From sequence record MT612988.1: a DNA stretch of 64,000 bases; one strand, 5' to 3'. This document shows, piece by piece, positions 1 to 1,200 of the stretch (position 1 is the first letter of the stretch; each line of letters opens with the position of its first letter). A model generated the notes under the pieces. It was not told the DNA's origin and searched no databases. It saw only the letters and a program-made list of their open reading frames with translations. The position numbers were made by a program, and so were the translations under genes.

Positions 1-96
1 CGAAGCGGATTAGATTTTCACAAATGGTGTAAGGTTTTAGACTGCCGCGTACCACACAGGAGCCGATGAGACTTTCACCAATTTTTCACTAAAAAG

Positions 97-205
97 TTAT
101 CCACATTATCCACAGACTTATGCACAGCTAAATCATGTTTTTATACACAGATTTCAGACACTTATGCACAATCTCATACACATATTATCCACAGATTTAT
201 ACACA
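97..205 (+). repeat. Array of DnaA-box nonamers (TTATNCACA x7 plus one with a single mismatch)
   Basis: TTATCCACA at 97, 106, 185; TTATGCACA at 118, 162; TTATACACA at 141, 197; TCATACACA at 174. All on the same strand in non-coding DNA and matching the TTWTNCACA consensus. Confidence 0.9.
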
Positions 206-584
206 TGTGCATTTAAACGAGGCATGGTGCGATATATTAAAAACAATACTATCTGTACCATGATCTGAGACGCTGTGAGAGCGATTCTAAGCGTTTTTAG
301 TCATCGTTTGATATATCGCTCAGGCACCAACCGGCTATAGCTGCTAGAGCACATAGAACAAGCATGAGGTAGCCGATAGGTATATCGTTTAGTAGATTGA
401 TTAGTGTTTGCATTACGATAGTTTAAAGCTCAATGATAGAATATCAATTAGGTAATACTGAATGATACAGTTAAACGCAGTTGTTATTAGCAGAGCCACG
501 AATGGAACTGTTCGTTTTGATTTATCGGTTACAAACAGATATGTAGTGAGAATCAGAATTAAGATTGATAGTGCGAACATGAGT

Positions 585-800
585 TTATCCTATTGATAGA
601 TTAAAGCGTGCAGCGACATAGCTTGCTCGTTGGTTGTTGTCATTAGTAATACGAATCATAGGTGGTTTATTTGTATGTTCGTTTACGTTATACATGTGAA
701 CGACATATTCTTTGCCTAGAGTAATGCCGCTTGGTGGTTCTGGTTTATCGATACGAGTTGAAGTATTGTCTATGCATATTGCTTTGATAGTTTGATTCAT
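585..800 (-). CDS. Hypothetical protein (71 aa)
   Basis: ORF in the dominant minus-strand direction; no family recognised. Confidence 0.6.
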   Translation of the reverse strand: MNQTIKAICIDNTSTRIDKPEPPSGITLGKEYVVHMYNVNEHTNKPPMIRITNDNNQRASYVAARFNLSIG

Positions 801-957
801 ATTGCGCCTGCCGTTACGTGTAGTAGAACATACGAGACAAAGCCTAGAACAGCAGTGATTACTAGTTTCACGAATCTAGGTTTGTTAATGAAGCTGAAGA
901 TACTCATGCCAGTGAGTATTGCACAGCATAGAAGTGTCATTAGTAGTATTGTCAAGC

Positions 958-1131
958 TCATAGTGTTATTCCGTATTTGTGAATCACAATCATGTTAGCT
1001 AGATTGACTATACAGCAAATGGCATTGAATATCAAGACAAAGTTTCTGTATTCTTTAGACATGATTTGCTCGTGTGAGTCTATCATTAGCACGACGCTGA
1101 ATACTGCGATGATAATAGATAGTCCAATCAT
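958..1131 (-). CDS. Small hypothetical membrane protein
   Basis: Start moved to MIGLSII (AGGA SD upstream); two hydrophobic segments; first gene after the promoter at 1160-1200. Confidence 0.6.
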   Translation of the reverse strand: MIGLSIIIAVFSVVLMIDSHEQIMSKEYRNFVLIFNAICCIVNLANMIVIHKYGITL

Positions 1132-1159
1132 AGTGTTTTCCTTTCTTGATTTGATATGT

Positions 1160-1200
1160 GTATGATACGCGAAAGGGCTGACATCTGTCAACCCTTTTCT
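1160..1200 (-). promoter_or_regulatory. Early promoter with embedded stem-loop (PeSL-like terminator/promoter)
   Basis: Minus strand: AAAAGGG-TTGACA-GATGTCAGCCCTTT...TATCAT; the -35 hexamer lies in the hairpin stem. Confidence 0.75.

What the first reader, a model, noticed from the sequence alone, without database searches (positions are those of the whole stretch)
97..205. Phased array of perfect DnaA boxes in a T4-like phage that has its own replisome
Seen: seven exact TTATNCACA nonamers and one single-mismatch copy lie in 109 bp of non-coding DNA, all on one strand. Start-to-start spacings are 9, 12, 23, 21, 12, 11 and 12, and a further degenerate TTTCAGACA at 152 fits an approximately 11-bp grid. 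I noticed only one other match in the window (38418, inside a gene), so the cluster is not chance. Established: this is the DnaA-binding consensus, and T4-type phages replicate without DnaA using their own polymerase, clamp and loader (genes 43, 45, 44/62 here). Inference: the array may be a DnaA sink like datA or a DARS. As phage DNA amplifies it could titrate host DnaA, or alter its ATP/ADP state, and so block host initiation. Alternatively it is a DnaA-assisted phage origin. Only one GATC lies nearby (about 262), unlike the GATC-rich oriC, which favours a decoy role.
Basis: partly seen in the sequence, partly recalled or inferred. Interest (0 to 1): 0.92.

Follow-up and report, generated by a model that had tools for sequence, protein, structure and literature searches.

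The report
Conserved DnaA-box array in vibriophage
A T4-like Vibrio phage that has its own replication machinery keeps, under strong selection, a tight row of eight binding sites for the host replication initiator DnaA in non-coding DNA; why it recruits this host protein is untested.

Summary
The window is Vibrio phage vB_ValM_R10Z (KVP40-like, Schizotequatrovirus). Seven exact TTATNCACA boxes plus one one-mismatch copy lie on the + strand at 97-205. This is the only such cluster in the 247-kb genome (chance about 4e-16).

The array is homologous in 14 phages of two genera (Schizotequatrovirus, Mylasvirus). Across them, only 8% of the eight specified box positions vary, against 50% of the free N positions and 57% of spacer positions. 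That is the signature of selection for DnaA recognition. No DnaA homologue is encoded by the phage.

The array is dispensable. KVP40-species phages keep both flanks but carry an unrelated 114-bp segment there, and KVP40 has no box cluster anywhere.

Similar box clusters are already described, and still unexplained, in T5-like phages. They also occur in many IMG/VR viral contigs.

Function cannot be settled by computation. I rank an accessory DnaA-assisted initiation site slightly above a DnaA sink. DARS-like, datA-like (IHF site) and oriC-like (GATC, 13-mers) features are not met. An apparent GC-skew step at the site is a local gene-composition effect.

Verdict: a genuine, selected host-DnaA landing pad. 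It is a new member of a known kind and of moderate interest.

The parts
97..205 (+). Array of eight co-oriented DnaA boxes: seven perfect TTATNCACA and one with a single mismatch. It forms a discrete cassette of about 110 bp.
   Evidence: Searches give sequence and statistics. Searches show homologous arrays in 14 phages, with core positions 8% variable against 57% for spacers. One search shows KVP40 is 41-46% identical here against 67-84% in the flanks.
97..105 (+). Box 1, TTATCCACA. It reads TTATCCACG in the VS1/QD01/VS2 and nt-1 lineages.
106..114 (+). Box 2, TTATCCACA, abutting box 1. It reads TAATCCACA in the VS1 and nt-1 lineages.
118..126 (+). Box 3, TTATGCACA. With box 2 it forms the 21-mer pair TTATCCACAGACTTATGCACA (3-bp gap).
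   Evidence: The identical 21-mer occurs in the T5-like Vibrio phage Achelous and in more than 120 bacterial loci.
141..149 (+). Box 4, TTATACACA (TTATCCACA in other lineages; only N differs).
162..170 (+). Box 5, TTATGCACA, invariant in all seven aligned phages.
174..182 (+). Box 6, TCATACACA, a weak box 3 bp after box 5. It is imperfect in every lineage but at different positions (TTACACACA, TCACCCACA).
185..193 (+). Box 7, TTATCCACA, invariant.
197..205 (+). Box 8, TTATACACA (TTATGCACA or TTACCCACA in relatives), 3 bp after box 7.
231..260 (.). A+T-rich block of 30 bp, 26 bp 3' of the last box. It is T-rich on the strand where the boxes read TGTGNATAA. It is a candidate unwinding element but is also conserved in array-less KVP40.
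   Evidence: One search places its helix instability at the 99.6th percentile genome-wide. Searches show its conservation.
216..237 (.). Conserved non-coding block AACGAGGCATGGTGCGATATAT. It is present in all relatives, with or without the array. Function unknown.
54..70 (.). Invariant non-coding block ACACAGGAGCCGATGAG to the left of the array. It is also present in KVP40. Function unknown.
   Evidence: One search shows it is specific to this lineage within IMG/VR.
256..298 (+). Conserved block CATG.TCTGA.ACGC...TTCTAAGCG.TTTT. On the + strand it looks like a weak hairpin followed by a T-run. It abuts the stop codon of the - strand ORF at 297-413.
   Evidence: The terminator scan did not call it.
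1..20 (-). Upstream (UP-like) part of a sigma-70 early-type promoter. Its hexamers lie just outside the window (TTGACA-18-GAGAAT with TG, at Va3 locus L001 3989-3960, equal to window -11 to -40). The promoter transcribes leftwards, away from the array.
   Evidence: 10 of 12 matches. Searches show conservation.

Best explanation
What is shown: the 109-bp segment is a cis-acting landing pad for the host initiator DnaA, maintained by selection. It consists of eight co-oriented 9-mers, seven of them perfect high-affinity TTATNCACA boxes. Three pairs lie 12 bp start-to-start, and one weak box always follows a strong one.

What is inferred: host DnaA fills the strong boxes as soon as the DNA is in the cell and extends cooperatively into a head-to-tail oligomer.

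Most likely use (inferred, not shown): an accessory, non-essential DnaA-assisted initiation site for early phage replication. The array has the same polarity relative to its neighbouring 30-bp easily melted A+T block (231-260) as the left half of E. coli oriC has to its unwinding element. DNA opened or destabilised there could be captured by the phage's own gp32, gp59 and gp41/61. Because T4-type phages use several individually dispensable origins plus recombination-dependent replication, the element can be lost, as it has been in KVP40.

My confidence that the segment is a DnaA-binding array under selection is about 0.85. The confidence given below is for the replication-assist function.
For: - Seven exact boxes and one near-exact box form the only cluster in 247 kb.
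- The homologous array is present in 14 phages of Schizotequatrovirus and Mylasvirus.
- Variable columns: 5 of 64 core positions, 4 of 8 N positions and 21 of 37 spacer positions; Fisher p = 1e-7.
- Box spacing is preserved except for one 1-bp indel.
- The phage encodes no DnaA-like protein but has a full T4-type replisome.
- A 30-bp block in the 99.6th percentile of helix instability lies 26 bp 3' of the last box. It is T-rich on the TGTGNATAA strand (polarity compared with E. coli oriC from established knowledge).
- T4 origins are short promoter+DUE modules without a dedicated initiator (PMC3016281), so a host-initiator-assisted variant is mechanistically plausible.
- The same 12-bp-spaced box pair recurs in bacterial chromosomes, 7 of 120 sampled loci lying within 300 bp of dnaA.
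- An intergenic 5-box array is also present in an unrelated rIIA-encoding viral contig (L034).
Against: - KVP40 and VH1_2019 keep both flanks, including the A+T block, but have no box at the site. KVP40 has no cluster anywhere. The A+T block therefore has a box-independent role and the array is not required.
- The boxes are almost all consensus (high affinity). There are no 13-mer-like repeats, no conserved GATC and no conserved IHF site.
- Around 86 co-oriented IMG/VR arrays there is no excess A+T on the 3' side.
- The GC-skew step at the site is confined to the two adjacent 2.5-kb bins and is equally present in array-less KVP40.
- In T5-like phages the comparable boxes lie far from the mapped origins (10.1101/866236).
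- The phage does not need DnaB/DnaC loading, which is the usual reason plasmids carry DnaA boxes.
Confidence: 0.33

Rival explanations
1. DnaA sink or decoy. The array does nothing for phage replication. As phage genomes amplify, roughly eight sites per copy over hundreds of copies would soak up host DnaA. This would block new rounds at the host origin or de-repress DnaA-controlled host genes, in the manner of titration at datA or of multicopy DnaA boxes.
For: - The boxes are nearly all consensus high-affinity boxes, which bind both ATP- and ADP-DnaA (established knowledge), in a number comparable to datA.
- The array lies in a hyperplastic early region of small unknown genes.
- A patchy, dispensable distribution fits an accessory host-takeover element.
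- No convincing origin hallmarks were found.
Against: - One copy at the start of infection titrates nothing. By the time copies are numerous, host initiation matters little to a lytic phage, so the benefit is unclear.
- Conserved order, orientation and spacing, and the persistently weak box 6 next to strong box 5, suggest an ordered complex rather than mere site count.
- No conserved IHF site of the kind datA needs.
Confidence: 0.25
2. Transcriptional element. A DnaA-coated array acts as a roadblock or insulator between two leftward early transcription units. Alternatively it couples the nearby early promoter to host DnaA status, and so to host growth state.
For: - The array sits between the end of one - strand gene run (ORF 297-413) and a strong early-type promoter about 110 bp further left.
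- No intrinsic terminator is predicted between them.
- DnaA-box complexes are known to block RNA polymerase and to regulate promoters (established knowledge; PMC8203912 was only listed and was not read).
- In L034 the array also lies just upstream of a promoter-like site.
Against: - The position relative to the promoter differs between R10Z (promoter 5' of the boxes, divergent) and L034 (promoter 3' of the boxes).
- Eight boxes are far more than known DnaA-regulated promoters use.
- KVP40 keeps the promoter and flanks without any box.
Confidence: 0.12
3. Anchor. The array tethers the phage DNA to membrane-associated DnaA, or builds a bulky nucleoprotein knot. This is the proposal made for the injection-stop region of T5.
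For: - T5-like phages, including Vibrio T5-like phages, carry box pairs 3 bp apart in non-coding pre-early DNA.
- The identical 21-mer pair is shared with R10Z.
Against: - The T5 proposal is itself untested.
- T4-type genomes are circularly permuted, so no fixed segment enters the cell first (PMC3016281).
- The T5 architecture of inverted repeats and terminal repeats is absent here.
Confidence: 0.08
4. The 9-mers are bound by a phage-encoded protein that happens to share the DnaA-box specificity, or are iterons for such a protein.
For: Most neighbouring genes are of unknown function, so an unrecognised DNA-binding protein cannot be excluded.
Against: - The conserved and free positions coincide exactly with the DnaA consensus, including the free fifth position.
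- The same 21-mer pair is used by unrelated phages and by bacteria of several phyla.
- tblastn finds no DnaA-like protein.
- No other repeat family or rep-type gene lies next to the array.
Confidence: 0.07
5. Chance, a selfish tandem repeat, or a coding repeat with no DnaA-related role.
For: Some 'triple DnaA-box' hits in viral contigs are coding repeats, for example (PVDN)n in L114. A 21-23-bp two-box unit suggests the array grew by tandem duplication.
Against: - Probability by chance is about 4e-16.
- No conserved ORF spans the array.
- Position-specific purifying selection holds across two genera.
Confidence: 0.01

Closest known systems
DnaA-box clusters in the pre-early (injection-stop) non-coding region of T5-like phages (Heusterspreute 1987; Davison 2020, bioRxiv 10.1101/866236)
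   Same: Both are virulent phages with their own replisome. Both have 7-8 DnaA boxes in non-coding DNA among early host-takeover genes, with boxes in pairs 3 bp apart. The Vibrio T5-like phage Achelous shares the identical 21-mer TTATCCACAGACTTATGCACA. Function is untested in both.
   Different: In T5 the pairs are spread over kilobases inside inverted repeats of the terminal redundancy, and about half are variant boxes. Here eight boxes form one 109-bp direct array in a circularly permuted T4-type genome.
DnaA-oligomerisation region of oriC (E. coli left half: R1, R5M, tau2, I1, I2)
   Same: Both have co-oriented boxes at roughly one helical turn (11-12 bp), a strong box nucleating a neighbouring weak one, and an easily melted A+T segment on the 3' side of the TTATNCACA-oriented run (oriC layout from established knowledge).
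   Different: oriC has few strong and many weak ATP-DnaA sites, 13-mer repeats, many GATC sites and an IHF site. None of these is conserved here. The array is dispensable.
datA, the chromosomal DnaA titration / DnaA-ATP hydrolysis locus of E. coli, and the DnaA-box clusters of Bacillus subtilis
   Same: All are non-origin clusters of roughly 5-8 consensus boxes able to hold many DnaA molecules.
   Different: datA activity needs a specific IHF site and box arrangement. The only IHF-like match here (131-143, one mismatch) is confined to the R10Z clade. The copy-number logic (a lytic phage) also differs.
Tandem DnaA boxes of plasmid and prophage origins (P1 oriR, RK2 oriV, F oriS)
   Same: Direct repeats of consensus boxes on a mobile replicon.
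   Different: Those origins combine the boxes with iterons and a Rep initiator, and use DnaA to bring in host DnaB/DnaC. Here there are no iterons and no rep gene, and the phage has its own helicase and loader.
T4 oriF/oriG-type origins (promoter + downstream unwinding element, R-loop primed; PMC3016281)
   Same: A short non-coding module in an early region with a promoter-like site and an A+T block. It is individually dispensable.
   Different: T4 origins involve no DnaA (no mention of DnaA in the review). No promoter reading through the A+T block is established here.

Membership tests
DnaA-box cluster (DnaA-binding cis element) | Matches to the 9-mer consensus TTATNCACA | tested here: met
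   Seven exact matches and one with a single mismatch, all on one strand.
DnaA-box cluster (DnaA-binding cis element) | Clustering beyond chance | tested here: met
   P is about 4e-16 genome-wide, and this is the only cluster in 247 kb.
DnaA-box cluster (DnaA-binding cis element) | Selective constraint on the specified positions and not on N or the spacers | tested here: met
   8% of core columns vary, against 50% of N and 57% of spacer columns, across three lineages of two genera; p = 1e-7.
DnaA-box cluster (DnaA-binding cis element) | Physical binding by host DnaA | not testable with these tools
   Needs EMSA, footprinting or ChIP with Vibrio DnaA.
oriC-type replication origin | A+T-rich unwinding element next to the box array, in the correct polarity | tested here: inconclusive
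   The 30-bp block at 231-260 is in the 99.6th instability percentile and has the right side and strand. It is short and equally conserved in box-less KVP40.
oriC-type replication origin | Repeated 13-mer-type motifs, GATC clusters and an IHF site | tested here: not met
   There is one non-conserved GATC, no conserved IHF match and no additional repeat family. DnaA-trios were not specifically scored.
oriC-type replication origin | Strand-composition switch at the site | tested here: not met
   The step is limited to the two adjacent 2.5-kb bins and is present without the array in KVP40.
oriC-type replication origin | Supports initiation (autonomous or infection-dependent replication) | not testable with these tools
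   Needs marker-frequency or plasmid assays.
datA-like titration / DnaA-ATP hydrolysis locus | Cluster of high-affinity boxes away from an origin | tested here: met
datA-like titration / DnaA-ATP hydrolysis locus | Essential IHF-binding site between the boxes | tested here: not met
   The one-mismatch WATCAANNNNTTR match at 131-143 occurs only in the R10Z clade. It is absent in the VS1, QD01, VS2 and nt-1 arrays.
DARS (DnaA-reactivating sequence) | Core of three boxes with oppositely oriented members | tested here: not met
   All eight boxes are co-oriented in every lineage.
Iteron/Rep plasmid-type origin | Iterons plus an adjacent initiator gene | tested here: not met
   There is no other repeat family. 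Neighbours are unknown-function PHROGs with no Rep domain.
T5-type iss DnaA-box region | Box pairs separated by 3 bp in non-coding early DNA | tested here: met
   The pairs are 106/118, 162/174 and 185/197.
T5-type iss DnaA-box region | Pairs embedded in the inverted repeats IRC/IRD within the terminal repeat | tested here: not met
   Only direct repeats are present, and no matching inverted repeats. The junction of the linear record is continuous and unique.
T4-type R-loop origin | Promoter reading into a downstream unwinding element | tested here: inconclusive
   The only good promoter reads away from the array. A 9-of-12 + strand match overlaps it but is not conserved in nt-1.

The most novel reading that the evidence does not exclude
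Virulent phages with fully autonomous replisomes (KVP40-like, T5-like and others) carry DNA-only 'DnaA traps'. These would be phased high-affinity box arrays that, once amplified, sequester or remodel the host initiator. They would thereby switch off host chromosome initiation or rewire DnaA-controlled host genes. That would be a host-takeover device made of DNA rather than protein. An equally new alternative is that these arrays make host DnaA an origin-opening factor for a T4-type replisome.
Probability: 0.3. Interest if true: 0.8.

Novelty: new member of a known kind. Interest (0 to 1): 0.55.

Why it matters
T4-type phages are the textbook case of replication that is independent of the host initiator. 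A DnaA-box array held under position-specific purifying selection across two genera shows that some of them still engage DnaA.

With the long-known but unexplained boxes of T5-like phages and the many arrays in viral metagenomes, this points to a recurrent, uncharacterised phage-host interface. The system is experimentally convenient. Array-bearing phages (nt-1, QD01, CZ01) infect the fast-growing laboratory species Vibrio natriegens. Natural array-less relatives (the KVP40 species) provide a built-in comparison.

Either outcome would be new biology for this phage family: a DnaA-assisted origin for a T4-type replisome, or a DNA decoy that manipulates the host initiator. It could also help explain the T5 boxes.

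Tried and rejected
1. GC skew as origin evidence. At 5-kb scale the site has the second-largest skew step in both R10Z (+0.20) and KVP40 (+0.16). At 2.5-kb resolution the step is confined to the two adjacent bins and exists without the array. It is a local gene-composition effect and was rejected.

2. Class-level test for an unwinding element. Eighty-six co-oriented IMG/VR arrays show no A+T asymmetry between the 5' and 3' sides. Uninformative.

3. Host-derived origin of the sequence. The 21-mer pair is found in more than 120 bacterial loci of many phyla, and only 9 of 120 lie within 8 kb of dnaA.

4. Phage-encoded DnaA-like binder. tblastn with E. coli DnaA gave only E >= 0.14 hits. The weak hit region has no Pfam family.

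5. RNA gene or structured RNA. There is no Rfam match, and fold z-scores are -1.5 and -0.9.

6. Small ORF across the array. ORFs differ between lineages. QD01_174 is probably an annotation artefact.

7. IHF site. Not conserved.

8. Dispersed repeat as the cause of assemblies breaking at this spot. None was found.

9. Extra lineage members in IMG/VR via the conserved flanks. Only KVP40 and VH7D were recovered.

10. Cultured relatives of contig L034. None in GenBank phages.

11. Literature. I found no report of DnaA boxes in KVP40-like phages or other T4-like phages in the searchable library. The KVP40 genome paper is not held.

Full report
IDENTITY AND OBSERVATION. The window is positions 1-64000 of Vibrio phage vB_ValM_R10Z (MT612988.1, 100% identity). 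This is a KVP40-like member of Schizotequatrovirus, family Straboviridae. Seven exact TTATNCACA sites start at 97, 106, 118, 141, 162, 185 and 197, and TCATACACA starts at 174, all on the + strand. From base composition, seven boxes in 109 bp have a probability of 7e-22 per window and about 4e-16 over the whole genome.

I fetched the rest of the genome. Its 247,167 bp contain 24 perfect boxes: seven in the array and 17 scattered (13.4 expected). There is no other cluster, even when one mismatch is allowed. Eight other exact matches lie in the window. The 'degenerate' site at 152 is not conserved. The lone GATC at 262 reads GCTC in relatives. The phage replisome genes are present: gp43, gp45, gp44 and gp62 in the window, and primase, gp41, gp59, gp32 and RNase H further on.

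SETTING. All surrounding genes are on the - strand. The array lies in a non-coding gap of about 390 bp. To its right is a run of tiny hydrophobic ORFs (297-1191). To its left is a strong sigma-70 early-type promoter (TTGACA-18-TGaGAGAAT, 10 of 12 matches). Its hexamers sit 11-40 bp outside the window start, and it transcribes away from the array. No terminator is predicted, there is no Rfam family, no significant RNA fold on either strand and no conserved ORF across the array. The flanking proteins are all unknown-function PHROGs.

COMPARATIVE EVIDENCE. This is the decisive part.
- The same array is found at the same place in R10Z, R11Z, Va3, VH7D, PVA23, phi-Grn1, phi-ST2, ValKK3 and XZ1.
- A diverged form (five perfect boxes plus three with one mismatch) is found in VS1, VS2 and QD01.
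- It is also present in nt-1 and CZ01, which belong to a different genus, Mylasvirus.

In a seven-phage alignment, 5 of 64 specified box positions vary, against 4 of 8 N positions, 21 of 37 spacer positions and 42-53% of flank positions. Fisher's test for core against spacer gives p = 1e-7. Order, orientation and spacing are kept apart from one 1-bp indel. Box 6 is imperfect in every lineage but at different positions, and it always lies 3 bp after the invariant strong box 5.

Selection therefore preserves exactly what DnaA reads and nothing else. This makes DnaA far more likely than an unknown protein as the ligand. The phage genomes encode no DnaA-like protein.

THE ARRAY IS DISPENSABLE. KVP40 and VH1_2019 keep both flanks at 67-84% identity. 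In place of the array they have a 114-bp segment that is only 41-46% identical and has no site within one mismatch of the consensus. The complete KVP40 genome has ten scattered boxes and no cluster. The other KVP40-type records aligned only from position 211 onward and are absent from the array BLAST hits.

PRECEDENTS.
- A pattern scan for three closely spaced boxes hit its 120-locus limit in IMG/VR. Most hits are co-oriented with 11-12-bp spacing and have up to ten boxes.
- Some hits are false positives, for example a coding (PVDN)n repeat in L114. Others are genuine intergenic arrays, for example five boxes in L034, an rIIA-encoding 77.7-kb contig.
- BLAST of the array against GenBank phages also hit T5-like phages of Salmonella, E. 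coli and Vibrio, and several microviruses.
- In the Vibrio T5-like phage Achelous, four perfect co-oriented boxes, including the identical 21-mer TTATCCACAGACTTATGCACA, lie in the non-coding DNA beside the pre-early genes A2 and A1.
- This element is described in the literature. T5-like phages carry about eight DnaA boxes in pairs 3 bp apart in the injection-stop region. The proposed role in stopping injection via membrane-bound DnaA is untested, and the author argues against an origin role because T5 origins map elsewhere (bioRxiv 10.1101/866236). A 2026 paper still treats the question as open.
- I found no report for KVP40-like or other T4-like phages.
- The 21-mer pair is also common in bacterial chromosomes of many phyla, so it is a generic DnaA double site.

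MECHANISM. What is shown is a selected, ordered array of DnaA recognition sites. DnaA binding itself is inferred, as is everything about function.

Points for an accessory DnaA-assisted initiation site:
- The boxes are co-oriented and helically phased, with strong-weak pairing, as in the oligomerisation regions of oriC.
- The 30 bp at 231-260 are in the 99.6th percentile of helix instability. They lie on the side and strand that correspond to the unwinding element next to R1 in E. coli (oriC layout from established knowledge).
- T4-type origins are short, multiple and individually dispensable (PMC3016281). This would reconcile a replication role with the loss in KVP40.

Points against:
- The A+T block is conserved without boxes.
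- There are no 13-mers, GATC clusters or IHF site.
- There is no class-level A+T asymmetry.
- There is no real skew switch.
- The phage does not need host helicase loading.

The sink reading fits the all-consensus boxes and the accessory distribution. It has a timing problem, because there is a single copy early in infection, and it does not obviously need the conserved geometry. Roles as a transcription roadblock or regulator, or as a T5-like anchor, remain possible.

I rank them as follows: assisted initiation 0.33, sink 0.25, transcriptional 0.12, anchor 0.08, phage-protein site 0.07, artefact 0.01. The remainder is for functions not listed.

MEMBERSHIP AND NOVELTY. As a DnaA-box cluster, every computable criterion is met. 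As an oriC-type origin, a datA-like locus, a DARS, an iteron origin or a T5-iss region, at least one defining feature was tested and not met. It should therefore not be filed under any of these, although it may work like one of them. It is a new member of a known kind of element, namely DnaA-box clusters on phage DNA. It is new for T4-type phages and has an unusually clean architecture of eight direct repeats.

VERDICT. The feature is genuine and under selection. It is moderately surprising rather than unprecedented, and its function is open and directly testable with V. natriegens phages. Interest 0.55.

Noticed in passing
window 1-31 (and the record ends of related GenBank entries): Independent assemblies break within about 30 bp of each other just left of the array. 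R10Z and R11Z start at window position 1. PVA23, PVA8, vB_ValM_PVA8 and PC-Liy1 end at about position 30-31. PVA23 was a default SOAPdenovo assembly. No dispersed repeat explains the break. It could reflect a coverage or read-end anomaly near the array.
   Followed up: partly
window 54-70, 216-237, 256-298: Three non-coding blocks are conserved in all relatives, including array-less KVP40: ACACAGGAGCCGATGAG, AACGAGGCATGGTGCGATATAT, and CATG.TCTGA.ACGC...TTCTAAGCG.TTTT. The arms CATGGTGC/GTACCATG flank a variable loop. Function is unknown.
   Followed up: partly
window 297-1191, - strand: A run of four very small hydrophobic ORFs (38, 55, 54 and 77 aa) that look like membrane peptides lies immediately right of the array. 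They are annotated in some relatives only.
   Followed up: no
R10Z 244404-245627 (L141 30704-31927, - strand), about 2.5 kb left of the array: A 407-aa protein of unknown-function family phrog_20046, with internal repeats and a weak GIY-YIG nuclease-domain match (26 bits against a cut-off of 22.6).
   Followed up: no
L128 2060-2365 (Vibrio phage QD01, CDS QD01_174): An annotated + strand 'hypothetical protein' spans the whole array. TTATNCACA contains no stop codon in any + frame, and the ORF is not conserved in relatives, so it is probably an annotation artefact.
   Followed up: partly
L148 2401-2567 (Vibrio phage Achelous, T5-like): Four perfect co-oriented DnaA boxes lie in the non-coding DNA beside the A2 and A1 pre-early genes. 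They include a 21-mer identical to window 106-126. Whether this reflects convergence or exchange between Vibrio phages is unknown.
   Followed up: partly
L034 5811-5884 (IMG/VR contig 3300044675_004257, 77.7 kb): An intergenic five-box co-oriented array lies about 50-90 bp upstream of a promoter-like TTGCCA-N17-TATAAT. The contig encodes an rIIA homologue (40% identity to R10Z) and has no GenBank phage relative.
   Followed up: partly
L114 1553-1597: Four 'DnaA boxes' with an exact 12-nt period are the coding repeat (PVDN)n inside a 325-aa ORF of a T4-like contig. This is a warning that pattern scans for box arrays pick up peptide repeats.
   Followed up: yes
R10Z position ~1 and KVP40 ~99,000: This is the second-largest GC-skew step in each genome at 5-kb scale. 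It is caused by the two adjacent 2.5-kb gene blocks: skew is -0.25 (R10Z) and -0.17 (KVP40) to the left, and +0.05 to the right. It marks a compositional boundary between gene modules.
   Followed up: yes
KVP40 whole genome (L143-L147): KVP40 contains no TTATCCACA or TTATGCACA at all. Its ten perfect boxes all have A or T at the N position.
   Followed up: no
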